Below are positions 11,696 to 64,000 of a DNA stretch of 64,000 nt, one piece after another. The notes beneath the pieces are model-generated. The model searched no databases. It saw only the letters and a program-made list of their open reading frames with translations, and was not told where the DNA came from. The position numbers and the translations under genes are program-made. The stretch is taken from the IMG/VR virus record IMGVR_UViG_3300020473_001965, positions 62,001-126,000 of that record, one strand, 5' to 3'. Within the stretch, counting starts at the first letter, position 1. Every line of letters begins with the position of its first letter.

Positions 11696-11839
11696 TTTAT
11701 TTTCTCGCGGTGGTCTTTACTCATATCTAAAATCTCATGAATCATTATCGATCGTTTAATCATTGTCTCTAAAATTATTTGAACAACCCTTACTTTCAGC
11801 ATCTTCTGCATAGAAATATATATTACCGAGCCCTGAATT

Positions 11840-14754: not shown

Positions 14755-15540
14755 CTAATTTGAAAATGGTACGTAGAGGTTTGTGTTTAACTTGTAGCCT
14801 CCGGCTTCCACATCTGCTTTAGCTTCTGCGTACGAAACAGATCGTGTAGCATCTTCAGCACCTCCAGCGCTTTCTGGAATGTAGACGGCTGCGTGTCGAG
14901 CGCCGCTCTTTGGAATGACAATTATTACACCGTTATTTTGATTGTATTGCATGGGCCCGATGTTTCCGTCACGTTCCTGCTTAAGCAGCCACTCAAGATC
15001 GCTCTCTCTTCCCGGAATTGGTATACCAGAAACTGTTACAAATCCGCGCGGGATTCGAAACTCATTGAGAAGTTGAATCTCTTCTTTAATAATCTGTTGT
15101 AGTTTTGCTTTGGTTATCTTCATGGTGTTCTCCATTGGACCGGCAGGAGGTGCTGCAGTTGGTGGAACTTGAATCGTTGCGCCGCTCATGTCAGAATGAG
15201 CTGTTTGGAAGCTTACGAACTGCGGGTGCTGCTTAAACATTCCCTTGATCACGTCCTTGATCAGCTGGCCCTGTTGCATCATCTCATCTTGAGTGTATCC
15301 CAGGCTTGATAACCACTCTAACAATTGAGGCTCACTTCTGCTTTTCTTCATAGCATTAAAGACAATGTAAAGCCCCATGTCGACTTGGCTTGACCATTCA
15401 AGCTCTGCAGCCCCGTATCGAGGTGCTGATTTTCCAGGTACCGGTGATAGTTCGTTGTGTATTTGATGAACCCGTTCAGATAGCACGCGGCTCAACTCTT
15501 CTTTAATAATCTGTCTTAATTTGTTTTTTGTGATTTTCAT
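14755..15540 (-). CDS. Leader-tagged protein, two leader copies
   Basis: MKITKNKLRQIIKEELSRVLSE (start re-called to 15540); internal MKITKAKLQQIIKEEIQLLNE. Confidence 0.75.
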   Translation of the reverse strand: MKITKNKLRQIIKEELSRVLSERVHQIHNELSPVPGKSAPRYGAAELEWSSQVDMGLYIVFNAMKKSRSEPQLLEWLSSLGYTQDEMMQQGQLIKDVIKGMFKQHPQFVSFQTAHSDMSGATIQVPPTAAPPAGPMENTMKITKAKLQQIIKEEIQLLNEFRIPRGFVTVSGIPIPGRESDLEWLLKQERDGNIGPMQYNQNNGVIIVIPKSGARHAAVYIPESAGGAEDATRSVSYAEAKADVEAGGYKLNTNLYVPFSN

Positions 15541-15556
15541 TTTGCTTCCTTTGACC

Positions 15557-16627
15557 TTAATCATACATTGGGGGTGTGTGTCTGACTGGTGCCCGCTTCT
15601 TGCGTGGCTTGGCACCATAAGCATAAAGCACATCTTCAATTTGTTTTAGAGTAAATCCTGCACGTTGTGCTTGATCGGCTGTAATATTACCATAGTCGGT
15701 GCCGCCGTCCTTGTATTCAATATTAATGTTACTTGGCTCGCCACCCTTGCGACGGACCTGATACGTTATCTTCTTGATATCATCCTTAGCTATGTAATCC
15801 ATTGTCAGTGAATTGCCGATAACTTCTCTTTCTCCTGGGTTTGGGTCCGCTTGATGCGCTGCATCCATGTCGGCACCACGCTGGTTCATCCAGGCAGACT
15901 CAAGATCTCTCATGAACTTACGTACTTTGTCAAGATCCCAGTTATCTGGAACGACAGCATCTTGAGAAAAAGACCCGTCGTTCCGACCTACCTTGTTTAC
16001 CCATCCGTTCATTGCGTCAAGGTCTAAGTCAAGATTCTCGTAGTTAACCATTTCATCAGCAAGCGCACCTTGAATGTCATTCGTAAGTGCATAGTTTGCA
16101 ACCCTGTTCATGGTATCCAGATCTTCATAAGGGTTTACCATAATTGGAAGCATTTTGCGCTCGCTGAGTATGGCTTCGCGTATAATTCTTCTAAGCTGTG
16201 ACTTCTTGATTCTCATCTTTCCCTCTGTGGCTGGAGGTAAATCATAGTCTGGTAGACCATGATCACCTGATTCTTGCCACTCACCTTTTCCATTCCAAAA
16301 TCCTGATGGATCTGCATCGGCAGGTGGTGGTCGTTCATGCCAGCCTTCTTGTTTAATGAGTGCTAATAGTTCGCTGTCATGCATCCACTCAGTTTTAGCA
16401 CCAGGATTTGCTCCGAAAACAACAAGAACGTTTGCACCCGGAGGGACTGGATCACCAAGGTCTATTGCGGCACTCACTGTCTCAGGCGAAGCTATGTCAT
16501 TGATATATCGAACTTCTCCGTCACGCGTGAATGTAACATTCCGCCAAGCAAAATGATCTTCAACCCAAGTGGGCACAGATACCACCTCTTGAATTATTCG
16601 CCTGAGCTGTGACCTCTTGATTCTCAC
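15557..16627 (-). CDS. Leader-tagged protein, two leader copies
   Basis: MRIKRSQLRRIIQEV; internal MRIKKSQLRRIIREAILSE. Confidence 0.75.
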   Translation of the reverse strand: MRIKRSQLRRIIQEVVSVPTWVEDHFAWRNVTFTRDGEVRYINDIASPETVSAAIDLGDPVPPGANVLVVFGANPGAKTEWMHDSELLALIKQEGWHERPPPADADPSGFWNGKGEWQESGDHGLPDYDLPPATEGKMRIKKSQLRRIIREAILSERKMLPIMVNPYEDLDTMNRVANYALTNDIQGALADEMVNYENLDLDLDAMNGWVNKVGRNDGSFSQDAVVPDNWDLDKVRKFMRDLESAWMNQRGADMDAAHQADPNPGEREVIGNSLTMDYIAKDDIKKITYQVRRKGGEPSNINIEYKDGGTDYGNITADQAQRAGFTLKQIEDVLYAYGAKPRKKRAPVRHTPPMYD

Positions 16628-16770
16628 TGTGATAAACTCCCTATGAATCCCATTACCATTACTACAACAAATACTGTTAATGGTATCATTGCTGCTGCCA
16701 TCATACCTAAATCTTTTGGTGTGACTCCTCGATGATCCATCCAGTCTTTGAGTTTTTTTATTGGCTTCAT
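16624..16770 (-). CDS. 48-aa membrane protein (below ORF-track cutoff)
   Basis: MKPIKKLKDW...MIPLTVFVVVMVMGFIG; 4-nt overlaps on both sides. Confidence 0.55.
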   Translation of the reverse strand: MKPIKKLKDWMDHRGVTPKDLGMMAAAMIPLTVFVVVMVMGFIGSLSQ

Positions 16771-16892
16771 TTCTTCTTGTCCTTGTTTTTCTTGACAGGG
16801 ACGGGCTGAAGCGCTGGCTGCAATCCCAGCAAAGCTGCTAGATCATCAATAAATTCGCTCACCTTGGCTCGAATGTCATCAAAGATTTTCAT
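16767..16892 (-). CDS. 41-aa hypothetical protein (below ORF-track cutoff)
   Basis: MKIFDDIRAKVSEFIDDLAALLGLQPALQPVPVKKNKDKKK*. Confidence 0.5.
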   Translation of the reverse strand: MKIFDDIRAKVSEFIDDLAALLGLQPALQPVPVKKNKDKKK

Positions 16893-32094: not shown

Positions 32095-33726
32095 TCAAGT
32101 CTTGGTTGCTTCATCTTCTTGATATTCTGTTAGCTCACGAGCAGACGGATCGTTCACATCTGACCAGTTGGGCATCCAAAATTTTGGTATCGTTAACGTT
32201 GCAGGTTTTCCAAAGAATTTCTCAAAGACCTTCCTATAATAATAGCTTTCTTTCAACACGGGTGTGCACGGGTGAAGTCGACTCCCATGTTTTGCAAACT
32301 CACCGTCTGAGACTACAGTGTTTACATGTTGCTGAATTATTTTGTGCCAAGAGTTTTCCCTTGTGGATACTGCATCAGAAAAAGCGCACTTAGTTCTATT
32401 AAGCACATCAAGTGGCAAGAGGCCTGTCTCAGAAAAAGCAGATCGAAGCAAGTTCTTTTCAGGGACTTCTCCGCCAAATCGCTTTAAGCCCACTGGAAGG
32501 CTCATATAATAGTCTACGAAATCTCGATCAAGAAAGGGTGTTCTTGCTTCGAGGCCGTGCGACGATACAGATCTGTCTGATCGGAGGACATCATAGATAT
32601 GGATTTCTCGCAATAGCTTTAAGTTTTCTTCAAAAAACGCTGCGTTGCTCGGTGCATTTATATTATAAAGATAGCCCATAGCAACTTCATCAGACCCATC
32701 TCCGTTGAACACCACCTTGACGTCAGTGTTCTCCTTAATATATTTCCCTACAAGATAATTCCCCACCGATGCTCTCACTGTTGTCGTGTCATACGATTCA
32801 ATGCTGTAGATTACCGCTTCTATTGCATCAACAAACTCTTGAGCGGTCGCTTCAACAACATGATGGTCAGAGCCTATCCAGTCTGCAACCTTTTGTGCAT
32901 AGACGACATCAGGACTGCCCGGCATTCCAATTGAAAACGTTTTTATTCTTTCGCTTGTCATAGAGTTGGCAAGGCTCGCTATCAGACTAGAGTCTAGGCC
33001 GCCTGATAGAAGACAGCCTATTTCTCTGTCAGACATCATTCTCTTTTCTACAGCTGATGTTAAAAGATTTTGTATCTGTGTCGTTGCTTCTTCAAAGCTT
33101 GCATTGTTATCGGGTTTATAGTCACAATCAAAATAACTGTAAAACGACTGGGGCGTTTCAGACGACCACCAAGAGCCCGGTGGAAAGTGTTGTATCTTTT
33201 CTGCGATATCAGACATTGCCTTGATCTCAGAAGCTACAAAATATTCACCAGAAGATGCTCCAAAGAAGCTTGGTCGTACTCCGTAACGATCTCTAGCTGA
33301 GTAAAGTATTCCTTCCTTTTTGTCGTATAAGGACAGTGCGAATACTCCGTCGAGCTCTCTACATGTTCTGTTCATTCCAAACTTAGCAAACATGTGTATT
33401 ATAATTTCGCAATCAGAGTTTGTCTCTGTCTTGAAATTGTACTTCTCGCTGAGCGTTTTGTGATTGTAAATCTCTCCGTTGCAAATCAACCAGTACCTTT
33501 GAAGGTTGGCTTTTCTTAAGTTCATTGGCTGGCCGGACTTTTCGTCTAACCCATTAATTGCAAGACGATGGAACCAGAGCACAGCCCTTGCCTTTGATTT
33601 TAAAGTGAGCTTGTTTTTAAATTCTTCAAATTCTGTCTTGTCGGGTCCACGGTGCTGAATTTTTGTAAAATGCTTGTCCAGCTCCCGCAAACTTCTATTC
33701 CCTAGATAACCTACAAACCCACACAT
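32095..33726 (-). CDS. asnB: Asparagine synthase (glutamine-hydrolysing)
   Basis: N-terminal MCG, HRGPD, NGEIYN, RD.YGVRP, LLSGGLDSS, GDGSDE, EARTPFLD. Confidence 0.92.
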   Translation of the reverse strand: MCGFVGYLGNRSLRELDKHFTKIQHRGPDKTEFEEFKNKLTLKSKARAVLWFHRLAINGLDEKSGQPMNLRKANLQRYWLICNGEIYNHKTLSEKYNFKTETNSDCEIIIHMFAKFGMNRTCRELDGVFALSLYDKKEGILYSARDRYGVRPSFFGASSGEYFVASEIKAMSDIAEKIQHFPPGSWWSSETPQSFYSYFDCDYKPDNNASFEEATTQIQNLLTSAVEKRMMSDREIGCLLSGGLDSSLIASLANSMTSERIKTFSIGMPGSPDVVYAQKVADWIGSDHHVVEATAQEFVDAIEAVIYSIESYDTTTVRASVGNYLVGKYIKENTDVKVVFNGDGSDEVAMGYLYNINAPSNAAFFEENLKLLREIHIYDVLRSDRSVSSHGLEARTPFLDRDFVDYYMSLPVGLKRFGGEVPEKNLLRSAFSETGLLPLDVLNRTKCAFSDAVSTRENSWHKIIQQHVNTVVSDGEFAKHGSRLHPCTPVLKESYYYRKVFEKFFGKPATLTIPKFWMPNWSDVNDPSARELTEYQEDEATKT

Positions 33727-34616: not shown

Positions 34617-34692
34617 TGGAGCGGGTGATGGGACTCGAACCCACAACGTACAGCTTGGAAGGCTGTCACTCTACCAGTTGAGTTACACCCGC
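34617..34692 (-). tRNA. tRNA-Gly (TCC)
   Basis: GCGGGTGTAACTCAACTGGTAGAGTGACAGCCTTCCAAGCTGTACGTTGTGGGTTCGAGTCCCATCACCCGCTCCA; cloverleaf with CCA. Confidence 0.95.
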
Positions 34693-34701
34693 AATTCGTC
34701 G

Positions 34702-35130
34702 CTATTCTTGAATATCTACAAGCTCTATTTCAAAATTTAAAGTTTTCCCTGCAAGCGGGTGATTAAAGTCGATAACAGCTTCTTCGTCTGTGAAAGAGCT
34801 GATTACTCCTCGGAACGTTCCCGTCTCATTTTGTGCCTGAACTACTCCGCCTACAGCAAATTCCATCTCTTCAGGAAACTGGGTCCTGGGAACAGTTGCA
34901 ACTGCTTGTTCGTCAATGGGTCCGTAAGCATTGTCAGGTTCGATTGTAACATTTTTCACTTCTCCTACTTGCATTCCTAAAAGCGCAGAATCAAATCCTC
35001 CAATAACTCTACCCTCGCCTACCTGAAATTCTAGAGGCATTTCTCTATCATAAGAGTTATCAAACTCCATTCCATCATCGAGTGTTCCTCGATAGTGAAC
35101 GCTAACTGTATTTCCGTTTTCTACTTTCAT
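34702..35130 (-). CDS. FKBP-type peptidyl-prolyl isomerase (SlyD/SlpA-like)
   Basis: VSVHYRGTLDDG.EFDNS, AYG, DFNHPLAGKTLNFEIEL. Confidence 0.92.
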   Translation of the reverse strand: MKVENGNTVSVHYRGTLDDGMEFDNSYDREMPLEFQVGEGRVIGGFDSALLGMQVGEVKNVTIEPDNAYGPIDEQAVATVPRTQFPEEMEFAVGGVVQAQNETGTFRGVISSFTDEEAVIDFNHPLAGKTLNFEIELVDIQE

Positions 35131-35172
35131 TTTTCCTTCTTTCTTTTGTGCATTTTGCACGGTTATTAGTGC

Positions 35173-35415
35173 TTAACGCACAACTTTTAGTTTTTCTACC
35201 CAGACTGGCAAAGATAACTCGGACCGACCAGATCCGTAAATTGCACTCTCTGGTACTTTGAATGGTACTAGTTCGTCTGAACCGCCTACCCAGTGCAATC
35301 TATCTGCAACTACATCGAACAAGAGTGTTTCTTGATCTTCAGTGGGATAATAGAACCCGTTGTAGCCGCGCTTGCTCATTCGAACTGTGTCACCTTTTTT
35401 GATTGTAATTTTCAT
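35173..35415 (-). CDS. Small SH3-like protein
   Basis: IKKGDTVRM. Confidence 0.5.
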   Translation of the reverse strand: MKITIKKGDTVRMSKRGYNGFYYPTEDQETLLFDVVADRLHWVGGSDELVPFKVPESAIYGSGRSELSLPVWVEKLKVVR

Positions 35416-35425
35416 TTGATGCTCC

Positions 35426-35794
35426 TCAGCAACCTTTTAAAACGTCTATTTCTTCCCAGGCACCCTGCCAGTTTGTGTACCTGACTTTAGCTATCCCAGC
35501 CTTTTTCATCTCTTGCATGCAGAGATAACATGGGCGTGCCATTGTCCATCGATGATCATGCTTTGTAAATCTAATAACTTCAATTTCATCTCCCGGTTTT
35601 GCAAATCTCAATACATTCATTTCTGCGTGCATGTGCGAAGCCCATGTACCATCCTCATATTGTCGCTTAAACCTTGGGTGAGTCTTATCAGTATTTTCAC
35701 CTATCTTCACGACCTTGCCTTTTCTTCGTAAGATAGCAGCCAAATGATAGGTTCTACCATTGCTGATCGCTTTTTCTTTAGCTCGATAGTACAC
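35426..35794 (-). CDS. Zn-dependent deaminase (cytidine/dCMP deaminase fold)
   Basis: HAE and ARPCxxC motifs. Confidence 0.75.
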   Translation of the reverse strand: MYYRAKEKAISNGRTYHLAAILRRKGKVVKIGENTDKTHPRFKRQYEDGTWASHMHAEMNVLRFAKPGDEIEVIRFTKHDHRWTMARPCYLCMQEMKKAGIAKVRYTNWQGAWEEIDVLKGC

Positions 35795-35815
35795 TTGGCA
35801 TGATGCCCTCCTTAG

Positions 35816-35903
35816 TGGCGGAAGCGGTGAGATTCGAACTCACGATACGTTTCCGTATGCCGGTTTTCAAGACCGGTGCCTTAAGCCGCTCGGCCACGCT
35901 TCC
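35816..35903 (-). tRNA. tRNA-Ser (TGA)
   Basis: GGAAGCGTGGCCGAGCGG...CTTGAAA...GTTCGAATC...CTTCCGCCA; long variable arm. Confidence 0.95.
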
Positions 35904-35905
35904 AG

Positions 35906-36505
35906 TTAAACTTTCCATAATCCTGACTGATTTCCAATACCAGTCCATCTTGGCCGGACGGTTCGTGAATAGAGATCCAAGTATGGACCTTTGCTTCTTT
36001 CCTCAACAAAAGAGTAAAATTCTTCAGGCTTTCGAGAATGCTGTCGCCTCTGAGCGAAAATATAATCCTTAGAACCGCACAGACCCTTTCCGTTGGGAAC
36101 TGACTCTTTCTCATTTGTCCCTGAATACCTTGTTCTTTTTCCCATTCCCTTTCGATATCTTACAGCAAAAATACACATCTCAGTGTATCTCATTCCGTAC
36201 GGGGTAGGGCTTCCCACATTTGACTTTACCCATGGGATCAAGCTGATTGGTTTGAAACCTAGCGCATCACAAACTTCAAGCGCAGGTAAAATCCCTTGAT
36301 CTTTCCCAGCTGTAAATGAATTAACTGTCCACATGTACATATGGGCTTCAGGAGCGACAGGATGCTTCTTAAACCACTCTGATATCGTGCAAATTATCTC
36401 GCCCTTAGACTGAACATTGTAATGAGTCGAAGGTTGTAAAGTTGCATGACCCACACCCCCTGTGGTCTTTCTCCAAGGTGGGTCTATTACGATAGTTTTA
36501 TACAT
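35906..36505 (-). CDS. MT-A70-family N6-adenine methyltransferase
   Basis: IVIDPPW, HSRKPEEFY, LDLYSR..R..W...GNQ. Confidence 0.85.
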   Translation of the reverse strand: MYKTIVIDPPWRKTTGGVGHATLQPSTHYNVQSKGEIICTISEWFKKHPVAPEAHMYMWTVNSFTAGKDQGILPALEVCDALGFKPISLIPWVKSNVGSPTPYGMRYTEMCIFAVRYRKGMGKRTRYSGTNEKESVPNGKGLCGSKDYIFAQRRQHSRKPEEFYSFVEERSKGPYLDLYSRTVRPRWTGIGNQSGLWKV

Positions 36506-36520
36506 AGCTTATCCATAAAA

Positions 36521-36596
36521 TGGCTCCCCGAGCAGGACTTGAACCTACGACCCGCTGATTAACAGTCAGCTGCTCTACCAACTGAGCTATCGGGGA
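36521..36596 (-). tRNA. tRNA-Asn (GTT)
   Basis: TCCCCGATAGCTCAGTTGGTAGAGCAGCTGACTGTTAATCAGCGGGTCGTAGGTTCAAGTCCTGCTCGGGGAGCCA. Confidence 0.95.
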
Positions 36597-38984: not shown

Positions 38985-39746
38985 TTATTTTCCCTCCATG
39001 AGTTTCATATATTTTTCTTTAGAGATTGGATAATCAGAATGATTTGTGCTGTCCTCAGTAATTCCGAATCTAAGCCTGATTATCTTTTCTTCCCTAGAAG
39101 TCAAGCATCGCAAACCTTTGCGAACAGCTCCGGTAATTTTTTCCTTGTCCAGAATATCATCTAAGTGTGTAGCATCACTATCAGGGACGATATCTTCAAG
39201 GGTCCCGGATTCATCTTTCCCAATCGGCCGGCTAAGTGACGTTGTATTGGTCGGCGCTTGCAAAGCATCTTCAATCAACGAAGTTGTCACGCCTAAGATA
39301 TCAGCAAGTTCTTCTTTAGTTGGGGCTGAACCGAATTCATCCTCATACTCTTCAGAGACATTTTTGATCTTAGATAGTAGACCTCGAGCGTGAGATGGAA
39401 TTCTAATAGTCGACGTGTTTGCTGTAACATGTCGGCGAACTGACTGACGAATCCACCAAGTTGCATACGTAGAAAAACGAAAGCCTCGACGCCAATCGAA
39501 TTTCTCAACAGCTTTCATCAAGCCAATGTTAGATTCTTGAATCAGATCAGAAAGATCACATCCAAAATGCTGATATTTCTTAGCGATGCTCACAGCTAGT
39601 CGCAAGTTTGACTCGATCAACTTCCTTCTAGCTTCGGGGTCACCTGCCTCGATTCTCTTTGAGAGTTCTACTTCTTCATCTTTGGTAAGAAGTTTAGACT
39701 TCCCAGCTTCTTTAAAGTAAACGTTAAGTAAGTTAGACACAAACAC
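38985..39746 (-). CDS. RpoD/RpoS-like sigma-70 factor, truncated after region 4.1
   Basis: [57 protein letters not shown] then ends. Confidence 0.9.
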
Positions 39747-40969: not shown

Positions 40970-43367
<2,398 letters not shown>

Positions 43368-54226: not shown

Positions 54227-54619
54227 TTATCCTCTCACGTGTCGAGCGTCTTTGTAGATTAAATCTACTTCTTTAGCGTATTTTATATCTAAGCCTGTCA
54301 CTTCGTTTAAATCATGTGTGTAAATTTCTATCTCAACGTCTTTTGGATTTATCGTTATCGTCCCATGGTGATTCATCTCTTCCTGAAATACAAGTACTTC
54401 TGCAACGAAAAAGAGACGCTGTTCAGGTGAATCAAAATCGAAGCGCCTATGGAGCTTATTGGGACTATCTGTCTGTGTCCAGGTTTGCTTTGGTGCTTCA
54501 ATAGGTAGTTTTCTAGGCAATCCTATAGCTTCGTTAAGAGATTCAACCAGAGCTAATTCTGATTCATTCTCGTCAAGGTGGCCGTTAGACTTCATTATCT
54601 CTAGAATTGATCGACCCAT
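54227..54619 (-). CDS. Pterin-4-alpha-carbinolamine dehydratase-like protein with N-terminal extension
   Basis: W......KL.R.F.F, EMNHHG.I, IYTHD...VT.LD..YA..VD. Confidence 0.75.
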   Translation of the reverse strand: MGRSILEIMKSNGHLDENESELALVESLNEAIGLPRKLPIEAPKQTWTQTDSPNKLHRRFDFDSPEQRLFFVAEVLVFQEEMNHHGTITINPKDVEIEIYTHDLNEVTGLDIKYAKEVDLIYKDARHVRG

Positions 54620-55749
54620 TAGCTTCTCTTAGCAAGTTCTTTGTCTGCTTTCTGAGCTGCCTTCTTGAGCATTTTACCATATTCTTCGGGTGTGTAAGCC
54701 TGGATTAGCTCTTTGAGATCATCTAGGATGAATTTGTGCAAAGAATTGTTTTCACTGTGCGGCTTCCCGTTTCCATATTCTCTGCCGGTTCCTAATGTAT
54801 GCCACTGGGAAACTAGATCCACAGAAGACTTTATTCCACCCGAGTAGTAGTCTGACAGTAGTTGATGTACGAAGAATCTAAAGACTTCACGAGGTGCTTC
54901 TAATTCTTTTGAATTTGTAAATCTGTCATACACAGGTAGTTGAGCGGCATCCGGATTTAGCTGCTCAGTCATATCTTGAAAAACAAGATAGAGAATTTTT
55001 TCAATCTCAGTGGCAGTGCCCATTACTTCGGGGTCAAGTCTTGTTGGAATTGCTGACCTACGAGATGGTCGCTTGCTAACCTGAGCATGGTCTCCTGCCT
55101 TTTTCATAAAGTCATATAAGACGTTAGTTACAGCTGAGCGACCTACGCCCATTTGAGCTGCAATGGCATCTATTATTTCTCCAATAGTTAAAGCGTTGGG
55201 ACCCATTCTCAATTCTGGATCGAACAGGTCGACCGTCTTTAGCTCTTCGGGAGTAAGCTTAGCTCTCTTTTGAAAAGCTTGTACTATTGCTTCTTCATCA
55301 GGTTCTTCTTCAGAGTACTCGCCTGCTTCGTCATCACCTGAATCGATTGCTTCGAGATCAGCGGCTGTTGGGCCTTCGAGATCTTTCATCCACTCGGGCT
55401 CATCATCCATTTCGTTAACCACACTCTCTATGATTTTTACGAGAACCATCTCATCGTTTGACTGCTCTCTAATCTTCTTCACTGATTTTCTAAGCTTCTT
55501 ATAAATAGTTGTCTGTTGGTCCTCTGTGAGTTTTGAAAGCAGCCTTCCTAGCTTTCGCATTGTTGGGTTTGACTCAAAAGCTGGTACTGATTTTAAGTTT
55601 CCCACTTCTGCACCGCTCACAGAAGGTTGAGGGCGGACAGGGACGACAGGAGGTTCGTTCACTACTACTGGATCGTTACCTGATGACGCCAGGCCCAACG
55701 TCTCTTTTATTAAAGCTTGTAGCTTGTTTCTTTCAATCTTAGTGGGCAT
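54619..55749 (-). CDS. Leader-like hypothetical protein with possible HTH
   Basis: KIERNKLQALIKETL; TIGEIIDAIAAQMGVGRSAV; GATGATATTTAT upstream. Confidence 0.55.
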   Translation of the reverse strand: MPTKIERNKLQALIKETLGLASSGNDPVVVNEPPVVPVRPQPSVSGAEVGNLKSVPAFESNPTMRKLGRLLSKLTEDQQTTIYKKLRKSVKKIREQSNDEMVLVKIIESVVNEMDDEPEWMKDLEGPTAADLEAIDSGDDEAGEYSEEEPDEEAIVQAFQKRAKLTPEELKTVDLFDPELRMGPNALTIGEIIDAIAAQMGVGRSAVTNVLYDFMKKAGDHAQVSKRPSRRSAIPTRLDPEVMGTATEIEKILYLVFQDMTEQLNPDAAQLPVYDRFTNSKELEAPREVFRFFVHQLLSDYYSGGIKSSVDLVSQWHTLGTGREYGNGKPHSENNSLHKFILDDLKELIQAYTPEEYGKMLKKAAQKADKELAKRS

Positions 55750-55811: not shown

Positions 55812-57290
55812 TTAAGGATTTGCTGCCTGATTTAAACTCCATGCTGCGGCGCCCGTTATTACTATCCCACCGACGACCCCTAGCGCAAACCAAAGTTCAT
55901 TCTTGGGCTTTGATGCTTTTTCAAGCCGGGTGTCGAGAAAATCAATTTGACCATTTTTAATGGCTAGCATTTCATTATAATTGGTCTCTAGACGCAAGGT
56001 TTTTGCACTTAAGTTATCGATCTCAAGTTGATATTCAGCCCTTACCAAATTTACTCTTCTGTCAACTTCAAGCTGGCAGCTCTCTTCAGTTAGCTCTATT
56101 TGAGCTAGAAGACTTGCGGCCGCGGCTGTACTGAACAGTGTGCCTGAATATGGTGCTATTTCACCTTTTTCCAGCGTTGTCACAAGCTTTGCTTGTTCAC
56201 TTATATCATCAGCCTCGTCACCATAAACTGGTAACGGTGCTACTAAAAGTGCTATCGAAGTAATCCAAGCTGCAATTTGTCTCATCATATTAATCTATAT
56301 CAACAACAGTAAAACCAGTTAAATCAGCAATCTGCTTGGTTATCTCATCCGGGTCTTCACTATTATCTTGTATTAACTTTTTAATTCTTTTCTTTTTTTC
56401 TGCATCTAGCTTTTTTGACTCAGACTCATATTTTTCTTCGATCTGCTTGATTGCAACCTGATATCTTTTGTTTGCAGCATCACGATCTTCCAGCTCTTTT
56501 TCATGAGAGCTCTTTAGAGCATTGATCTCATCTTCGTAAGCCTTCTTGCGCTCGTTCAGTATTTTAGAAAAGTCTACTGGTTTTCGGCTAATTATCAAAA
56601 CTATAATTCCTGCCCCTACCAGGAAAACAACGTGACCGTTGACTTTAATCCAAGCCCAGGCTTTTTTTGCCCAATGCTTTAGCTTTGAAGCCAAGGTCAG
56701 CGCTGTATTAGCAATGCTTAACGCTTGAATCATTTTCCATGCTTCCAGGAGATCGCAGCATCAATAACAGTCTGGCCTCCAATGTAAATCATAGCAATCA
56801 TTCCCCACGTATCTGCATCTAGGTAGTTATAGCCTAGCAATGCTGTAGCTGTCAAGAACACAAAGAATTTTCTAGAAATCAATCTTCCCATGATCTGGTC
56901 GATTAACCCTAGCTTTTCTCCTTCAATAGCAGCCTGTACCTGCTTAACATCAATATCATTGTCAGCCATAAACATACCTTATTTCTCCTACTCTTCAGTA
57001 GCTTCAGCTTCAGCAGGCTCAGCCGCACCAGTAGTATCAGTTCCCTCTACTGTTGTTGCAGCAGGGGCTGTTGCTTCTGTTGCTTCAGCTGTCTCTGTAG
57101 TTCCTGTAGTTTCTGTATTGCCTGTAGCTTCTGTGGTCGTCTCTTCTGACGATTCTTCGACTGCAGGTTCTTCAGCAGCTGGGGGTTCGTACGAGCACGT
57201 ACCATAAGCAGAAGCGACTACTAGTACACCTCCTACTACACTTATTTGAACCTTCCATCTGTTCCATAGTTCTTTTGCTTTATCTAACAT
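55812..57290 (-). other. Membrane-protein cluster (55812-56288, 56290-56733, 56730-56975 two-TM holin-like, 56988-57290 A/E/T-rich)
   Basis: Hydrophobic segments and coiled coils. Confidence 0.5.
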
Positions 57291-57301
57291 AATTACCTCT
57301 T

Positions 57302-57646: not shown

Positions 57647-57648
57647 GA

Positions 57649-57927
57649 TTAAAACGGACTCTCATTTTCAAGTAGATCATATATCTTATCAGCTTCTGTG
57701 CTAGAAATTTTCTCAACTGTTTTGTTTTCTTTGTCGCGCTTAATTTCATTAAGAAAGTTCATAAAATAATTTTCTTCAGATGCTAAGGCAGTTGCACATG
57801 CAGAAAAGAAATCTTGCATAGTTAAGTCCTTTTTAAATAGTATACTCCGCATATCAGCATGCGTTTCTTTTTCTATATTAACATGGACACTTTTCTTGCT
57901 TGCTATTACTCTTTTTGTTTTAGACAT
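57649..57927 (-). CDS. Possible ribbon-helix-helix DNA-binding protein
   Basis: KKSVHVNIEKETHADMR......LTMQDFF. Confidence 0.5.
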   Translation of the reverse strand: MSKTKRVIASKKSVHVNIEKETHADMRSILFKKDLTMQDFFSACATALASEENYFMNFLNEIKRDKENKTVEKISSTEADKIYDLLENESPF

Positions 57928-57931
57928 AGTC

Positions 57932-58549
57932 CTACGCTAGTTTTGATGCACCCGCTCCTACGGCAATTGGTGTTTCAAGATCATCATTCATAGTACCGCT
58001 AGGACGAGTAAGTGTATCAAGTTTTTCATCAACTTCATCGGCGGACGCTTTGTCATATCGATCTAGCATAAATTGTCGAGCTCTATTTTTAATTGTCGTC
58101 TCAACATTAATCAAGTTGTTAAAGTTATTAATTAACCGTGAGATTCTCTCAGCAAAAGCATCAGCGTTAAGGGGCTGCTGAACTTCTTCTCCTGGGTCAT
58201 CAACGGCTACTGAAGAGTTGTCCACAGTTAGGCGCACATCATAGCCTGCTTGCTTTAATTTCTCAATCATGTTTTTAATGTCATCATCGGAGGCTGCGTC
58301 CGGGTCTTCTTCAGGCGTCGGTTCAGCATCTTCAGCTTCTTCGCCTTCTTCTTCTTCAAAGAGGTAACCTAGTGCTGATCTAAGTGTTTTAGATTCATCA
58401 GCTCTTTCCATCGCTGAATCTGCTTCATACTGTAACAATAATGCATCAATCTGACGATCTATCGAATCTTGCTCTTCAGCAGCACCCTCAGAAATCAGTT
58501 TTAGCTCTTCTCTTATAATTCTTCTCAGTATTGCTGCTTCCTTTTTCAT
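57932..58549 (-). CDS. Leader-tagged acidic protein
   Basis: MKKEAAILRRIIREELKLISE; start re-called. Confidence 0.65.
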   Translation of the reverse strand: MKKEAAILRRIIREELKLISEGAAEEQDSIDRQIDALLLQYEADSAMERADESKTLRSALGYLFEEEEGEEAEDAEPTPEEDPDAASDDDIKNMIEKLKQAGYDVRLTVDNSSVAVDDPGEEVQQPLNADAFAERISRLINNFNNLINVETTIKNRARQFMLDRYDKASADEVDEKLDTLTRPSGTMNDDLETPIAVGAGASKLA

Positions 58550-58550
58550 T

Positions 58551-58949
58551 TTAGCTATCCTGTATTCCAGCTCTTTGCTTGCCCAGTTCAGCACCCTTAC
58601 CTAACTTCTTGGCTTTTGAAGTGGTTACATTTTGCTCTACAAATGTAGTTAACATATCATCAAAAAACTGAATTAAGGCCGGGATTTCTGTTGAAGTTAT
58701 GTTCTGTGCGCCTCGAAGTGCCTTCATCATATAGTTTCCTGCTTCTGTTTTATTTGTAGGCATCTTTGCACCTTGCAACTTCGGCTGGTATTCTTTTCCG
58801 GCGGCACCTAGTTCAGCTTGGTCTCCTTCGGGGGCATCTTCTTGACCAGGTTGATTCTCAGATATAACTCTCTTGGACAGCTCATTGAGCTTCTTAATCT
58901 GCAATTGGTTTCTAACAATCTTTCTAAGTTTTGATTCTGTAATTTTCAT
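58551..58949 (-). CDS. Leader-tagged protein
   Basis: MKITESKLRKIVRNQLQIKKLNE. Confidence 0.7.
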   Translation of the reverse strand: MKITESKLRKIVRNQLQIKKLNELSKRVISENQPGQEDAPEGDQAELGAAGKEYQPKLQGAKMPTNKTEAGNYMMKALRGAQNITSTEIPALIQFFDDMLTTFVEQNVTTSKAKKLGKGAELGKQRAGIQDS

Positions 58950-58956
58950 TGTGTTC

Positions 58957-59640
58957 TCACTTAAGTGCTTTTGCGATCTTCTCAGCTCGCTTAAATCGGT
59001 CCTCGATGACTTGCCAGTTTAGTTCCTTCATCATCGCGTATACATAAGACTTTCTCTTTGAAAGATAGTCCCTGTAATATGAGTGCTCCCACACGTCGAC
59101 GACAATCACGGGATAGAATCCGACCGGAACATTAAGGCTGTGTAAGTCGATTACTGTGTTCATGTATCGTTGCGTGTATGTGTTGTAGCCTGTGACTACC
59201 CAACCATTTCTGGCAGACTTTGCACATGCTATAAAGTCTTCTTGCCATGCATCGAAAGATCCGAAGTCTCTCTCAAGACGCATAAAAGAGAGTGTGTCCA
59301 TAGAAACTTCGCTTTGGACATCGCTAATGTTGTTAAAGAAGAGCTCGTGTAGATAAGCAGCGTTCATGTTGTACGTTTCATCCACTTTCAAGCTTCGGAA
59401 GTAAGAATGATTTAAGCCCGCCTCATCTCGATTTGCGGCGTCGAGCTCAGCTGAGACTCTATTAAATGTTTTTACATAGTTCTCATACAAGCCCTCATGT
59501 GCGTGCTTGTTCTTTTGGGTTAAAAGCTCAGTGGGCAAATCAAATTGCTTCTTTTGCAACACGAGTGCTTCATTAACTTCTTCTTCTTCGATTCCCAAGG
59601 AATCTCTGATTATTTCTCTTACACCATCTTTAGTAATCAT
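58957..59640 (-). CDS. Fe/Mn superoxide dismutase-family protein with leader-like N-terminus
   Basis: H..LY..YV, LHELFF, FGSFDAW, DVWEHSYY.DY; MITKDGVREIIRDSL...VNE. Confidence 0.85.
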   Translation of the reverse strand: MITKDGVREIIRDSLGIEEEEVNEALVLQKKQFDLPTELLTQKNKHAHEGLYENYVKTFNRVSAELDAANRDEAGLNHSYFRSLKVDETYNMNAAYLHELFFNNISDVQSEVSMDTLSFMRLERDFGSFDAWQEDFIACAKSARNGWVVTGYNTYTQRYMNTVIDLHSLNVPVGFYPVIVVDVWEHSYYRDYLSKRKSYVYAMMKELNWQVIEDRFKRAEKIAKALK

Positions 59641-60011
59641 TAGTCCACCACATATTCTTTTTCTAAATCTTTCTTGCTAACTTCTAGAGATTCCACTTCG
59701 CCCGTATCCGGATTCACATACTCTAGATTGACTGAGTCGGGGCCGATATGACTAACTGTGTACTCATACCCGCGTGGCCCGCCATTGGGTAAATGTGTTA
59801 CTCGGGTATCGAGGCCAAGATTGTCCACCTTTACTCGAGGTTCTTGGTCTTTCGGCTTTTCATCTTTCTTTGTGTCACCCGGGTCTTCAACAGACTTGTC
59901 AGCCTTCATACCATCAGCCGGCTTTTCAGAAAGCTCCTTGATTACGTCACGAAGATGCTGATCATACTGATCACGCATCATTCGAATTATTTGTTTCTCT
60001 GTTAATCTCAC
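59640..60011 (-). CDS. Leader-like hypothetical protein
   Basis: GTG start after GGAAGG: MRLTEKQIIRMMRD...IKELSE. Confidence 0.55.
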   Translation of the reverse strand: MRLTEKQIIRMMRDQYDQHLRDVIKELSEKPADGMKADKSVEDPGDTKKDEKPKDQEPRVKVDNLGLDTRVTHLPNGGPRGYEYTVSHIGPDSVNLEYVNPDTGEVESLEVSKKDLEKEYVVD

Positions 60012-62746
60012 TTTCCTTCCCCTAAACCTGCTAGTGTCATCCATCTTTCGTCAACCTGAGACTGCTCATGAGCTCTTGACTCTGTTATTACATCTGTTGA
60101 CTCGGGCCCCTCTTTAACAAGGCCGTATGTGACGAGCACATCGACGATTTTGTCTCTAGTTGCCTTGTCCTGGAATGATTGTCGGCGTTTGTCACCAAAA
60201 GCATTGCTTACTGCCTTGTTTGCTGCTGCTCGAGAGACCTTTGACTTGTTTGATACAAACTGATTAAAGATTTTTTGAACCAGTCTTTGTGTAGCTGCTT
60301 TGTTCTTGGCGCCTAATTTTGGATATTCAAACGACCCGCCTTTTGAAGTCTTTGATTTTTTATCTTTCTTCAAGTAGATATCAGAAGTAACAGATTTGTC
60401 GACTGTAAAGTAAGGTTCTACCTCGACACCTTTTCTGCGGAGATCGGGTGAACCCATGTCTTTCACCATTTGATCGTATGTTCTGTCTTTAACTGGTTTG
60501 TTTCTACCTAAGTGGGTCACACCTTTTCGTCGATCATCTAGATCACTTGAGGATGGCGTTGTATCTTTTCCAGTAATGCCTTGATCTTGTGCCGCTTGGA
60601 ATCTTTCTTTTTCAGTTTCGTATCGCTTGAGTGTAATTCCTCCTCGAGTCCGGTGGGCGTGAACGCCGTCGTCGTCAAGACGAAGAATTGCTAGTCTTGG
60701 TTTATCATCACCTGGTTTTGGTGGTACGGGAGGTACGGGAGGGTCGTCTTTTCCGCCAGTTCGTTTGTCATTAAGCGTGAACTGGCCGTCTCCGACGGCA
60801 CCATCGAGCATCTCTTTGGTAATCGGCCCAAATTCTGGGTGCTTTACTTTTAATAGCGCGTTCACCCACTTGAGAAGTGTCGGATAGTCGTCAAAGTTTT
60901 TGAAAGACGCACCAAACGTTCCCTCATCTTCTGGGTAGTTTTTAGGTTCACCCTGCCTGTTCTTGAATATGAACTCACCTTCGTGAGCTTCTGAAAGCAG
61001 ATCGATTATGGCATCAGGCGTTGTTATTCCTAATTCTACTAATGCAGGCAGGTTGGGCACATACCCAGAAAGATCTAGATCTACTTCCTCTTCTTCACCG
61101 GTTTCTGGATCTTTGACTGTTATTGTCATACGATTGGCAAAAAGGTCTATCACGATTTGCTCGTCTTCACCAGGCGGTGGAAGTGGAGGATCGTCTTCTC
61201 CACCTTCTTTACCTACATCCTCAAATCCGTCAACCATGACCTTGAGGATGGACATGCGAGAGCCGCGGATCTTGCCCGAACCTTTTTTACCACCCTTGCC
61301 TTTCCATCGAAGGAATCCACTAGCAGCACCTGCAGCTAGAAACCCTAACCCGAAGCCTTTGAGCAAGGGGCCGGCCCACTTCATAAGGCCGTTCAACACA
61401 TCATTCCTGAACGTATCATCTTCAACTATTCTAGTCTGATCTGGCATTGACTGGGAAAGCGTCTGAGATACATTCTCTGAGAACTGACCTGGGTCTATTC
61501 CGAAAAGTTCTGATCCTGCTTTTCCCATACCAGATGTTGCGTCGCCCGCGCCGCCGACAAAAGCTGTTACAGGGTCTGCGTTTGATGAAATAAGGTTGTC
61601 CACAGCTGCTGGACCCTTAGAGTCCATCATCGATGCTTTGATCAACTTAAGCAACTGTGCATTCTTCCCGCCGCCGAAGACAGTTCCCATGGAGGGTCCG
61701 CCTGCTTTACCAAATGTGCCGTCTCCCGTTATTCTTCGAACAACACGGATGATACCTTCTTCAGGCTTGACTTCACCCAAACCTACTGATTTCGAAATTG
61801 TTTGGGTTACTGTTTTTCCTGGAACTGTAGTTGTAGTTACATCCTTCATTGACTGCATCAAATCTTGAGCAAAAGGTGTGTCAGCTGCCCACCCGAGTGT
61901 CATCATAGCTGCGCCCGTTCCGATAAGAACGAGAGGTAACTTATACCCATAAGCAGCTTCAAAGTTTGCGGCGACATCGCCCTCTTTCCGACCAATTGAC
62001 TTTTCTTCTTGGCCTTCAACCTCTTCGAAGAGTAGGTCAGCAAGTGACTCTTCTTTACTCTCCCTATAGTAGTACTGGTCGTTCATCGCAAAGTCTTGGA
62101 AGTAAATTACTACCCCTCGAAGAACAGCGATAATGGTGTTGGCCGTTTTTGTATCAAGCTGCTCGGCGTCATGAGCAGAAACTACATCATCATAGATTTT
62201 TTGAAACTTAGCTGCTTCAGTCTTGAAACCGGATTTGTTTGCCTTGTTAGGGAATTCTGCTTGAACAAGCTCATCATACAAGTCTGAAAGCGGTTTATAT
62301 TCTATTGCTTTTAGCCAAGATTCTGCTTCTCTCTTTGCATTATCTTTAAGTTCTTGTCGCTTCTTGATATCAAACGTCTCATTTCCCCCTAGAAGTGTTC
62401 CGGCTTTGTTTCCGAACATTCCAATGTCTTTGATCCCTTTGATTCGATCAACTGTCTTAGCAAAAAAGCCGCGGGTGTCTTCGCCGGCTTCTTCTTGCTT
62501 GGCTTTCAGCATTTTCTTCAATGCAGATTTTGACAAAGCTTTAAGTTCGGCCTCGTCTGCTTGTGGATCACGATCCATTATCTTTTTGATCAAAGTTTTC
62601 TTTCGAGTGAAACCCAGTAACTCATTCAGCTCATCGTCTGAAAGCCCATTATTTGATGCTAAGATTGCTATGTGCTCTTCTGTCAAGTTGGCAAAATCTT
62701 CGTCGTCGAGCTCAAAAAGCAAAGATTCTAAGTCGTGTTGATTCAT
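60008..62746 (-). CDS. 912-aa protein with Gly-rich hydrophobic segments; possible ejected/internal virion protein
   Basis: Two TM-like stretches, Pro-rich linkers, C-terminal ITES...ERWMTLAGL; CGTAATAATTAG at 62778-62789. Confidence 0.55.
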   Translation of the reverse strand: MNQHDLESLLFELDDEDFANLTEEHIAILASNNGLSDDELNELLGFTRKKTLIKKIMDRDPQADEAELKALSKSALKKMLKAKQEEAGEDTRGFFAKTVDRIKGIKDIGMFGNKAGTLLGGNETFDIKKRQELKDNAKREAESWLKAIEYKPLSDLYDELVQAEFPNKANKSGFKTEAAKFQKIYDDVVSAHDAEQLDTKTANTIIAVLRGVVIYFQDFAMNDQYYYRESKEESLADLLFEEVEGQEEKSIGRKEGDVAANFEAAYGYKLPLVLIGTGAAMMTLGWAADTPFAQDLMQSMKDVTTTTVPGKTVTQTISKSVGLGEVKPEEGIIRVVRRITGDGTFGKAGGPSMGTVFGGGKNAQLLKLIKASMMDSKGPAAVDNLISSNADPVTAFVGGAGDATSGMGKAGSELFGIDPGQFSENVSQTLSQSMPDQTRIVEDDTFRNDVLNGLMKWAGPLLKGFGLGFLAAGAASGFLRWKGKGGKKGSGKIRGSRMSILKVMVDGFEDVGKEGGEDDPPLPPPGEDEQIVIDLFANRMTITVKDPETGEEEEVDLDLSGYVPNLPALVELGITTPDAIIDLLSEAHEGEFIFKNRQGEPKNYPEDEGTFGASFKNFDDYPTLLKWVNALLKVKHPEFGPITKEMLDGAVGDGQFTLNDKRTGGKDDPPVPPVPPKPGDDKPRLAILRLDDDGVHAHRTRGGITLKRYETEKERFQAAQDQGITGKDTTPSSSDLDDRRKGVTHLGRNKPVKDRTYDQMVKDMGSPDLRRKGVEVEPYFTVDKSVTSDIYLKKDKKSKTSKGGSFEYPKLGAKNKAATQRLVQKIFNQFVSNKSKVSRAAANKAVSNAFGDKRRQSFQDKATRDKIVDVLVTYGLVKEGPESTDVITESRAHEQSQVDERWMTLAGLGEGK

Positions 62747-62821
62747 TATATAACTCCGCGTGCCTGCAGCCTACAATCTAATTATTACGCAAAGAGACAA
62801 AATAATGACACACGCAGCTGT

Positions 62822-63226
62822 TTATTGGTAACTTTTAACAGACACACCTGAAGAGAGAAGCAAATCTATCCCAGACCTATCACGATACTCTTCGTCATAG
62901 ATCACTTCATCAATTCCGGCGTTTATCATCGCTTTGGCACACATTCTACAAGGTGAGAGCGTCACATACATTATCTTCTTCTTAGGATTGTTATAATCCA
63001 TTTTTAGAAGTGCGTTAATTTCTGCATGAATCATTCCCGACGCGCCTGGTTCTACTGACTCTACTTCATTAGGCCCGCCTTGATGGTTTCCGTTATACCC
63101 AACGGAAAGAACTTGTGTATTATCGTCAGTGACTACTATAGCTCCCACTTGATATCTTGGATCGTATGACCTTCTAGAAATGTTTCTGGCAAAGCTCATC
63201 CATATTTCATCCCACTCTGGACGCAT
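62822..63226 (-). CDS. dCMP deaminase
   Basis: RP.WDEIWM..A...S.RS, QVGA, GYNG, HAEINAL, SPCRMCAK. Confidence 0.9.
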   Translation of the reverse strand: MRPEWDEIWMSFARNISRRSYDPRYQVGAIVVTDDNTQVLSVGYNGNHQGGPNEVESVEPGASGMIHAEINALLKMDYNNPKKKIMYVTLSPCRMCAKAMINAGIDEVIYDEEYRDRSGIDLLLSSGVSVKSYQ

Positions 63227-63999: not shown

Positions 64000-64000
64000 A

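What the first reader, a model, noticed from the sequence alone, without database searches (positions are those of the whole stretch)
58957..59640. Superoxide dismutase with a leader-like extension among putative late genes
Seen: MITKDGVREIIRDSLGIEEEEVNE precedes an Fe/Mn-SOD fold that keeps His/His/Asp/His ligand-like motifs but has HEGLYENYV instead of HHxKHHxxYV. It is flanked by leader-tagged genes downstream of a class II motif. Inference: the SOD is packaged in the head to protect DNA or is injected at infection.
Basis: partly seen in the sequence, partly recalled or inferred. Interest (0 to 1): 0.6.

Follow-up and report, generated by a model that had tools for sequence, protein, structure and literature searches.

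The report
Leader-tagged superoxide dismutase in jumbo phage
A marine T4-like jumbo phage encodes an iron/manganese superoxide dismutase with a 24-residue N-terminal tag ending in a site typical of T4 head-protease cleavage, so the enzyme is probably loaded into the phage head, though this has not been shown directly.

Summary
Window 58957..59640 (-) encodes a 227-aa Fe/Mn-SOD-fold protein with about 24 extra N-terminal residues and an altered first-helix motif.

The window is part of a 235,672-bp uncultured marine phage record that has T4-type capsid, portal and prohead protease genes.

More than 200 homologues on phage contigs carry the same N-terminal layout: an amphipathic helix, a variable linker, an invariant [L/I/V]-x-E followed by S or A, then the SOD. 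The closest cellular SODs start at the canonical N-terminus and have no such extension.

About 20 other genes in this genome begin with a related tag (MKITKxQLRxIIKEE...L[S/N]E). The same tag occurs in many large viral contigs. Five sampled contigs all had the T4-type protease and a SOD homologue.

In 26 of 239 family members the metal ligands are lost, in at least about 13 changes on a tree. His48 is lost together with the three undisputed ligands, so it behaves as the fourth ligand. The tag and Glu24 are kept in all 26.

Best reading, confidence about 0.5: a propeptide like the T4 capsid-targeting sequence loads the SOD into the prohead and is then cleaved off. Packaging, cleavage, enzyme activity and late expression are all untested.

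The parts
58957..59640 (-). Fe/Mn superoxide dismutase-fold gene, 227 aa. Candidate metal ligands are His48 (codon 59497-59499), His98 (59347-59349), Asp182 (59095-59097) and His186 (59083-59085).
   Evidence: Ligand conservation and co-loss.
59569..59640 (-). Predicted propeptide, residues 1-24. It has an amphipathic helix (residues 4-15 in the model), an acidic linker and V-N-E24, with Ala25 as the predicted new N-terminus.
   Evidence: AF2 secondary structure. [LIV]xE followed by S/A in 99/99 anchored homologues and in 26/26 ligand-lost homologues. E24 is 100% conserved. Cleavage itself is inferred.
59640..60011 (-). Upstream neighbour, translationally coupled to the SOD. It probably starts at a GTG overlapping the stop of the 912-aa ORF (GTGA), preceded by GGAAGGA, giving about 123 aa that begin (M)RLTEKQIIRMMRD. 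The longest ORF runs to 60044.
   Evidence: Orthologues of 122-156 aa sit in the same position in L015 and L151-L155. The tag score is weak in the window (0.8 bits) and 12.3 bits in L015.
60008..62746 (-). 912-aa ORF of unknown function that heads the gene string. It is variable or absent in relatives.
62779..62788 (-).
   Evidence: of 10 genome copies, 8 are intergenic on the coding strand and 7 of those lie 15-42 nt before a start codon. P is about 4e-9 for 8 of 10 being intergenic. Its timing class is unknown.
58551..58949 (-). Downstream neighbour, 132 aa, with a clear N-terminal tag (MKITESKLRKIV...LNE).
   Evidence: 20.2 bits against the tag model built without it.
57932..58549 (-). Second downstream gene, an acidic protein. 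Its tag starts at the internal Met (MKKEAAILRRIIREEL..ISE). Orthologues directly follow the SOD in relatives.
   Evidence: 13.5 bits. Synteny.
54619..55749 (-). 376-aa protein with a weak tag-like N-terminus. It is preceded by a GATATTTAT motif at 55776-55784.
   Evidence: Tag score 4.6 bits.

Best explanation
The gene encodes a genuine Fe/Mn-type superoxide dismutase whose metal site is His48, His98, Asp182 and His186. The first ligand is displaced by one position on a remodelled first helix.

Its first 24 residues are a propeptide of the kind T4 calls a capsid-targeting sequence. An amphipathic helix binds the assembling prohead core, so the protein is enclosed in the head. The phage's gp21-type prohead protease then cuts after Glu24 in V-N-E, ahead of Ala25, and releases a canonical-length SOD of about 203 aa inside the capsid. 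From there it could act inside the particle or enter the host with the DNA.

Shown here:
- the SOD fold and the conservation pattern of the ligands
- the family-wide tag and E24 site
- the absence of the tag in cellular relatives
- T4-type head genes, including the protease, in this genome
- a family of similarly tagged genes

Inferred only: binding to the core, cleavage, packaging, ejection, enzyme activity and expression timing.
For: Fold and ligands:
- establish the SOD fold.
- When family members are sorted only by H98/D182/H186, the positions that lose conservation in the 26 ligand-lost members are H186, H48, H98, W184, D182 and L166. About 45 other conserved positions stay at 0.9-1.0. 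His48 therefore behaves as a ligand.

Tag architecture:
- In 99/99 anchored homologues the extension ends in [L/I/V]-x-E followed by S or A (93 of 99). The propeptide is 22-49 residues long and the linker is variable.
- E24, L15 and V27 are kept in all 26 ligand-lost members.
- Cellular relatives have no extension.

Head-maturation machinery:
- Peptidase_S77 matches at 3.4e-27, with 35% identity to T4 gp21.
- Gp23-type capsid and T4-type portal genes are present.
- T4 propeptides end the same way: gp24 ...LRE then S, gp23 ...LTE then A.
- In T4, 10-19-residue N-terminal propeptides target internal proteins to the core and are removed by gp21 (PMC9026906; PMC3012670). These proteases cut after Glu (PMC5694885).

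Tag family:
- 17 frames score above every hit in a tenfold shuffled proteome.
- [LI][SN]E occurs at residues 15-32 in 11/23 tagged proteins against 5/286 others, p = 1e-10.
- One tagged gene lies between the protease and scaffold genes.
- 23 of 120 SOD orthologues (the MNDKTLKQIIREELG clade) match the tag model above all 2400 shuffles.
- The tag recurs in more than 120 viral stretches. Five of five sampled large contigs have both the protease and a SOD homologue.

Precedent: PA5oct has Peptidase_S77. Its SOD-like protein has an extension ending I-A-E then A before the canonical start and carries the ESI-MS/MS note.
Against: - No proteomic, cleavage or activity data exist for this lineage.
- The window's own SOD N-terminus scores only 2.1 bits against a tag model built from other genes. 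Its link to the tag family rests on orthologues.
- [LIV]xE is common: 29% of all ORFs have one at residues 17-32. The list of 23 tagged genes was partly chosen with a model that included the L-S-E columns.
- The gene lies about 80 kb from the head module, after thymidine kinase, DHH-family and dCMP deaminase genes. Its upstream motif is shared with asparagine synthase.
- His48 aligns to canonical position 27, not 26, and His30 is Leu. Activity is therefore not certain.
- The PA5oct virion list includes 'virion-unrelated enzymes', and its table could not be read.
- The complex prediction of tag with scaffold could not be run.
Confidence: 0.5

Rival explanations
1. The SOD is a cytoplasmic auxiliary enzyme that lowers superoxide in the infected cell. 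The N-terminal extension is a lineage-specific structural, oligomerisation or regulatory element. It is neither cleaved nor used for packaging.
For: - The gene sits beside nucleotide-metabolism genes and far from the head module.
- Its promoter-like motif is shared with asparagine synthase.
- The window's own N-terminus does not significantly match the tag model.
- The metal site is intact in 213 of 239 members.
Against: - It does not explain an invariant [LIV]-x-E followed by S/A at the end of a linker that is otherwise free to vary in length and sequence.
- It does not explain why the tag outlasts the metal site in 26 members.
- It does not explain the resemblance of orthologous N-termini to a tag that heads about 20 unrelated genes.
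- T4 internal-protein genes also lie outside the head cluster (my own knowledge of the T4 map).
Confidence: 0.3
2. The protein is mainly a non-catalytic building block that uses the SOD fold, for example a prohead-core or internal head component. Any dismutase activity in the window's clade is a dispensable remnant.
For: - 26 of 239 members have lost one to four ligands in 17 different patterns, with at least 13 state changes on a tree. They keep full length, synteny, the tag and about 45 conserved positions.
- Neighbouring genes encode very acidic tagged proteins, reminiscent in composition of T4 core protein gp67.
- SOD folds serve as structural subunits elsewhere: PAP4 and PAP9 of the plastid RNA polymerase appear among the PDB matches.
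Against: In the window's own clade all four ligands plus W184 are invariant over 213 sequences down to about 60% identity. That argues for continued selection on the metal site there.
Confidence: 0.12
3. The extension is an export or membrane-targeting signal.
For: Several downstream genes encode membrane proteins.
Against: The extension is acidic and amphipathic. It has no hydrophobic core and no twin-arginine motif.
Confidence: 0.03

Closest known systems
T4 internal proteins IPI-IPIII and Alt, with their capsid-targeting sequences (CTS), processed by prohead protease gp21
   Same: - A short N-terminal propeptide on otherwise unrelated proteins, ending in [L/I]-x-E.
- A gp21-family protease, a gp23-type capsid and a gp20-type portal in the same genome.
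- Cargo genes scattered outside the head cluster.
   Different: - The tag here is about 22-24 residues (MKITKxQLRxIIKEE...L[S/N]E) and shows no sequence similarity to the T4 CTS.
- The cargo is a recognisable redox enzyme.
- Targeting and cleavage have not been tested.
SOD-like protein EST35_0261 of Pseudomonas jumbo phage PA5oct
   Same: - Fe/Mn-SOD fold (24% identity) with Leu-Tyr at canonical positions 30-31.
- An N-terminal extension ending I-A-E then A before the canonical start.
- A phage with a Peptidase_S77 protease.
- The record note marks the protein as detected by virion mass spectrometry.
   Different: - A different phage lineage.
- The first His is at the canonical position.
- The extension is shorter and unrelated in sequence.
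- The published paper does not discuss the protein.
Chlorovirus PBCV-1 A245R, a Cu/Zn superoxide dismutase
   Same: A virus-encoded SOD that is expressed late and packaged in the virion. It is proposed to lower superoxide early in infection (PMC7019647).
   Different: An unrelated Cu/Zn fold, a eukaryotic virus with an internal membrane, and no protease-processed targeting peptide.
Aquifex pyrophilus Fe-SOD (1coj) and archaeal-type Fe/Mn SODs
   Same: These are the closest solved folds: TM 0.79/0.85 and 32% identity. They share the His at the position of the second-sphere Gln, in the D-x-H motif.
   Different: Cellular enzymes have the canonical N-terminus, the HHxxHH helix motif and no tag. 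The phage family is about 10 residues shorter between the LP motif and the first helix.

Membership tests
Fe/Mn superoxide dismutase | C-terminal alpha/beta domain (Pfam Sod_Fe_C) | tested here: met
   E = 3.1e-20, 72.6 bits against a cut-off of 20.9.
Fe/Mn superoxide dismutase | N-terminal helical hairpin domain | tested here: met
   Pfam Sod_Fe_N was not reported at E <= 0.01. However, the model superposes on the whole 211-residue 1coj chain, TM 0.79/0.85, and phmmer aligns from residue 48.
Fe/Mn superoxide dismutase | Metal ligands 2-4 (His on helix 2; Asp and His in D-x-W-x-H) | tested here: met
   H98, D182 and H186 are present in the window protein and in 213 of 239 homologues.
Fe/Mn superoxide dismutase | First metal ligand (His26 of the canonical H-x3-H-x3-Y helix) | tested here: inconclusive
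   The canonical column holds A/N/E/S. Invariant His48 lies one column later. His48 is lost together with the three sure ligands, kept in only 15% of ligand-lost members, which argues that it is the ligand. The geometry could not be inspected.
Fe/Mn superoxide dismutase | Second-sphere Tyr34 and His30 | tested here: inconclusive
   The Tyr34 equivalent, Y55, is present in 114 of 115 members. The His30 column is Leu51 in 114 of 115.
Fe/Mn superoxide dismutase | Dismutase activity and bound Fe or Mn | not testable with these tools
   Needs the purified protein.
T4-type capsid-targeting propeptide | gp21-family prohead protease with T4-type capsid and portal in the same genome | tested here: met
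   Peptidase_S77 3.4e-27, Gp23 7.7e-77, Portal_T4 6.4e-76. 35% identity to T4 gp21.
T4-type capsid-targeting propeptide | Short N-terminal extension, absent from non-viral homologues, ending in [L/I]-x-E | tested here: met
   V-N-E24 in the window. L/I/V-x-E in 99 of 99 anchored homologues. No extension in L017-L019 or 1coj.
T4-type capsid-targeting propeptide | The same tag shared by several unrelated proteins of the phage | tested here: inconclusive
   About 20 genes share a tag. The window SOD scores only 2.1 bits against it, but 23 of 120 orthologues score 7.9-13.9 bits against a shuffle maximum of 6.9.
T4-type capsid-targeting propeptide | Removal by the prohead protease and presence of the mature protein in heads | not testable with these tools
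   No cultured member and no virion proteome.

The most novel reading that the evidence does not exclude
A cosmopolitan lineage of marine T4-like jumbo phages uses a roughly 23-residue N-terminal cargo tag (MKITKxQLRxIIKEE...L[S/N]E), read by the prohead core and cut by a gp21-type protease, to load about 20 different proteins per genome into the head. One core cargo is a SOD-fold protein that is injected with the DNA. It is enzymatically active in most members and has been repeatedly converted to a non-catalytic internal head protein in others.
Probability: 0.35. Interest if true: 0.8.

Novelty: new variant of a known kind. Interest (0 to 1): 0.62.

Why it matters
If the tag is a cargo-loading signal, reading N-termini alone would give a way to list the internal, probably ejected, proteins of an abundant uncultured group of ocean phages. 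These are the proteins that meet the host first.

It would also be the first case known to me of a phage that packages an Fe/Mn superoxide dismutase. The repeated loss of the metal site with retention of the tag would then be a natural experiment on how an enzyme becomes a structural virion component.

Practically, a 24-residue tag plus a defined cleavage site is the kind of module that has been used in T4 to load foreign proteins into capsids.

Tried and rejected
- **Megablast to the phage collection:** window 50000-64000 gave no match, so there is no close cultured relative.
- **tblastn with a 26-aa tag:** no match in the phage collection. This is uninformative because the query is short and a low-complexity filter applies.
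- **Family scans on neighbours and tagged proteins:** Pfam and PHROGs on the neighbours, and Pfam on ten further proteins, mostly tagged, gave no family.
- **Intergenic 8-mer enrichment:** weak on its own. Motifs were then read from upstream regions.
- **Sigma-70 and terminator scan:** at or below chance, with no minus-strand terminator inside the gene string.
- **RNA evidence:** no run holds the SOD as RNA.
- **Capsid propeptide site:** pairwise alignment with T4 gp23 does not place a Glu at the T4 cleavage column, so no capsid cleavage site is claimed.
- **PA5oct supplement:** the supplementary table is not held, and the preprint does not mention the protein.
- **MW462191.1:** the 'phage' SOD hit has bacterial-type neighbours and was set aside.
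- one script in which I had typed short peptide strings came back unrun. I repeated it from references only.
- **Export-signal reading:** rejected on composition.

Full report
**1. What is there**

Window 58957..59640 (minus strand) is an intact 227-codon ORF. Its ATG overlaps the stop codon of the preceding gene as TAATG.

The protein matches Pfam Sod_Fe_C over residues 121-215 (E = 3.1e-20). Among solved structures it is closest to Aquifex pyrophilus Fe-SOD 1coj (E = 6.3e-33), with query residues 48-227 aligned to chain residues 28-208. An AlphaFold2 model built on 50 homologues has mean pLDDT 87.6. It shows a short helix at residues 4-15, a coil at 16-41 and then the SOD fold. Foldseek superposes the model on the whole 1coj chain with TM 0.79/0.85.

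**2. Whose gene it is**

The window is bases 62001-126000 of a 235,672-bp IMG/VR virus record, estimated 87% complete.

- The genome has a Gp23-type major capsid protein (7.7e-77), a T4-type portal (6.4e-76) and a Peptidase_S77 prohead protease (3.4e-27). The three genes lie at genome coordinates 201-211 kb.
- The protease is 35% identical to T4 gp21 across the regions GE(L/C)xHP and SSRG(L/V)GS.
- The capsid protein's nearest cultured relatives are distant: Flavobacterium phage immuto, Microcystis phage Mel-JY01 and Rhodothermus phage RM378. No close record exists in the phage collection.
- The DNA occurs in marine metagenomes of five studies.

This is therefore an uncultured marine jumbo phage with T4-type head assembly.

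**3. Is it still a superoxide dismutase?**

Three ligands are unambiguous: H98, D182 and H186. The first helix is remodelled. In 115 homologues the only invariant His is His48. The column before it, which is the canonical ligand column in ungapped alignments with cellular SODs and with the PA5oct protein, holds A, N, E or S. Canonical His30 is Leu51, and the Tyr34 equivalent Y55 is kept in 114 of 115. Alignment alone therefore leaves the first ligand open.

The family supplies a natural experiment. Among 239 members gathered with two word searches and five genome loci, 213 have H-H-D-H at positions 48, 98, 182 and 186. The other 26 have lost one to four of these residues in 17 different patterns. 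On a FastTree tree this needs at least 13 changes of state.

I then sorted members only by the three sure ligands and listed every position that is at least 95% conserved in the intact class. The positions that collapse in the ligand-lost class, with the fraction of lost members still keeping the residue, are:

| Position | Kept in ligand-lost members |
|---|---|
| H186 | 0.12 |
| H48 | 0.15 |
| H98 | 0.19 |
| W184 | 0.19 |
| D182 | 0.23 |
| L166 | 0.27 |

About 45 other positions stay at 0.9-1.0. His48 therefore behaves exactly like a metal ligand.

My reading is that His48 serves as the first ligand, shifted by one position on a helix that is also about ten residues shorter on its N-terminal side. 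The spacing His48 to Tyr55 (i to i+7) keeps both residues on one helix face; that geometric point is inference, because I could not inspect the model coordinates. The window's protein belongs to the intact class, so it is probably active. Activity itself is untested.

**4. The N-terminal extension**

Every full-length homologue has the same layout: an amphipathic helix (consensus ..K..L+.II+[DE]SLG), then a linker that varies in sequence and in length, then [L/I/V]-x-E followed by S or A, then the conserved start of the SOD (YVAQxKxFDLPTELL).

- In 99 of 99 anchored sequences the residue two before the Glu is L (70), I (22) or V (7).
- The residue after the Glu is S (54) or A (39).
- The predicted propeptide is 22-49 residues long, median 25.
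- Cutting after Glu24 would leave a protein of canonical SOD length.

The nearest cellular homologues are a bacterial MAG at 34% identity, haloarchaeal and Thermoplasmata sequences, and 1coj. All start directly at the canonical LPxLPY segment, carry WHHDTHH-type motifs and have no extension.

Two 'bacterial' MAG contigs carry the tagged form: a 305,838-bp contig labelled Methylococcaceae TMED69 and a contig of a Bdellovibrionota MAG. Both have the phage gene order, so they are binned phage DNA.

**5. A family of tagged genes**

A profile built from N-termini in this genome finds about 20 to 23 genes that begin MKITKxQLRxIIKEE and, near residue 21-24, L-[S/N]-E. All are on the coding strand and nearly all match exactly at a start codon.

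With a model that excludes the SOD and its four neighbours, 17 frames score above the best hit in a tenfold shuffled six-frame proteome (11.4 bits). The tagged genes cluster at genome 26-28 kb, 73-81 kb and 116-122 kb. One lies between the protease and scaffold genes (206407..206880).

[LI][SN]E occurs at residues 15-32 in 11 of 23 tagged proteins against 5 of 286 others, Fisher p = 1e-10. Part of the list was chosen with a model that included those columns, so this figure is somewhat circular.

The window's own SOD N-terminus scores only 2.1 bits against the independent model, and the upstream neighbour scores 0.8. The two downstream genes score 20.2 and 13.5. The link between the SOD tag and the family is transitive. 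In 23 of 120 orthologues (the MNDKTLKQIIREELG clade) the N-terminus scores 7.9-13.9 bits, above all 2400 composition-matched shuffles, whose maximum is 6.9.

The hits often form tandem arrays and are mostly on contigs of 100-293 kb. I picked five large contigs only because they carry the tag. All five have a Peptidase_S77 gene and all five have a SOD homologue. In each, the SOD homologue sits in the same three-gene module: a 122-156-aa protein, the SOD, then an acidic tagged protein.

**6. Why a capsid-targeting propeptide is the best reading**

In T4, internal proteins carry 10-19-residue N-terminal propeptides that give affinity for the prohead core and are removed by gp21. These tags load even foreign proteins into the head (PMC9026906; PMC3012670). 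The gp21-type proteases cut after Glu within a short motif (PMC5694885). The T4 record itself shows gp24 starting MAKINELLRE followed by S, gp23 with ...LTE followed by A, and gp67 with a strongly acidic tail.

The phage studied here has the protease. It also has a tag on many unrelated proteins that ends in L/I-x-E, and acidic tagged neighbours next to the SOD.

The tag, Glu24 and neighbouring residues are kept in all 26 members that have lost the metal site. The N-terminal module therefore serves a role that does not depend on catalysis.

A precedent from another lineage points the same way. Pseudomonas jumbo phage PA5oct has a Peptidase_S77 gene. Its SOD-like protein EST35_0261 has an extension ending I-A-E followed by A before the canonical start. 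That list includes seven 'virion-unrelated enzymes', and I could not read the table.

Virion-packaged SOD is also known for chlorovirus PBCV-1, with an unrelated Cu/Zn enzyme (PMC7019647).

**7. Expression**

The SOD lies third in a tight minus-strand string: the 912-aa ORF, then the neighbour, then the SOD. The neighbour most likely starts at a GTG that overlaps the upstream stop as GTGA, behind GGAAGGA. No minus-strand terminator-like site lies inside the string.

Forty-two nucleotides before the 912-aa ORF lies GTAATAATTA. Of ten copies of this motif in the genome, eight are intergenic on the coding strand. The motif also precedes asparagine synthase and small unknown genes. A different motif, GATATTTAT, precedes many structural genes and the tagged gene at window 54619..55749. 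'Late' is therefore not established for the SOD. RNA libraries gave nothing usable.

**8. Verdict**

| Reading | Confidence |
|---|---|
| Best explanation: an intact Fe/Mn SOD carrying a T4-CTS-like propeptide that loads it into the prohead and is removed after Glu24 | 0.5 |
| Rival 1: a cytoplasmic antioxidant enzyme with a lineage-specific N-terminal element | 0.3 |
| Rival 2: a mainly structural SOD-fold head protein | 0.12 |
| Rival 3: an export signal | 0.03 |

I found no description of a tagged phage Fe/Mn SOD, or of this tag, in five literature searches. The library is incomplete, so this is weak evidence of novelty.

I class the finding as a new variant of a known kind: the T4-type capsid-targeting principle, with a new tag and a new cargo.

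Noticed in passing
window 14758..15645, 11075..11716 and 15560..16837 (minus strand): Three open frames each contain two copies of the MKITK...IIKEE tag in the same frame with no stop between them, about 100-140 codons apart. The second copy mostly begins at its own Met. They could be internally initiated genes, fused duplicates or polyproteins cut at the internal L-x-E.
   Followed up: partly
window 55812..56288, 56290..56733, 56730..56975 and 56988..57290 (minus strand): A string of small membrane proteins downstream of the SOD module: a signal-peptide plus coiled-coil protein, an N-terminal TM plus coiled-coil protein, and an 81-aa TM protein. This resembles a holin/spanin lysis cassette and is conserved in L011, L013, L015, L016 and L153-L155.
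   Followed up: no
genome-wide, e.g. upstream of genome 37596, 39699, 43017, 44186, 61614 and 100985 (window 38985..39746 for the last): A third promoter-like class: TTTAGTGTAA, then about 17 nt, then TGGTATTAT followed by TAGATAGTAAGGA. It looks like an extended -10 host-type promoter and is probably early.
   Followed up: no
L015 (NHDW01000006.1, 305,838 bp, labelled Methylococcaceae bacterium TMED69) and L016 (JBBAUR010000009.1, Bdellovibrionota MAG): Contigs deposited as parts of bacterial MAGs carry the phage SOD module in phage gene order. They are most likely phage contigs binned with bacteria, or a hint at hosts.
   Followed up: partly
L028 (MW462191.1, 'Bacteriophage sp.', freshwater): The SOD on this record is flanked by L,D-transpeptidase, aminotransferase, efflux and transcription-regulator genes. 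The 'phage' record looks bacterial around that gene.
   Followed up: no
window 40970..42556, 32095..33726 and 34617..36596: The phage encodes a GroEL-type chaperonin and an asparagine synthase. It also encodes three tRNAs, Gly-tcc, Ser-tga and Asn-gtt.
   Followed up: no
window 62686..62851: A 169-nt contig from a metatranscriptome library of the sample that may be the source of this DNA covers the start of the 912-aa ORF, the GTAATAATTA motif and the end of the dCMP deaminase gene. It may be transcript or carried-over DNA.
   Followed up: partly
L151-L155 and the neighbours of the SOD in L015 and L016: The gene after the SOD encodes a roughly 200-250-aa protein that is extremely rich in Asp and Glu and has a clear tag (e.g. 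MRLTRNILRRLIKEEL..LSE in L151). Its composition recalls the T4 prohead core protein gp67.
   Followed up: partly
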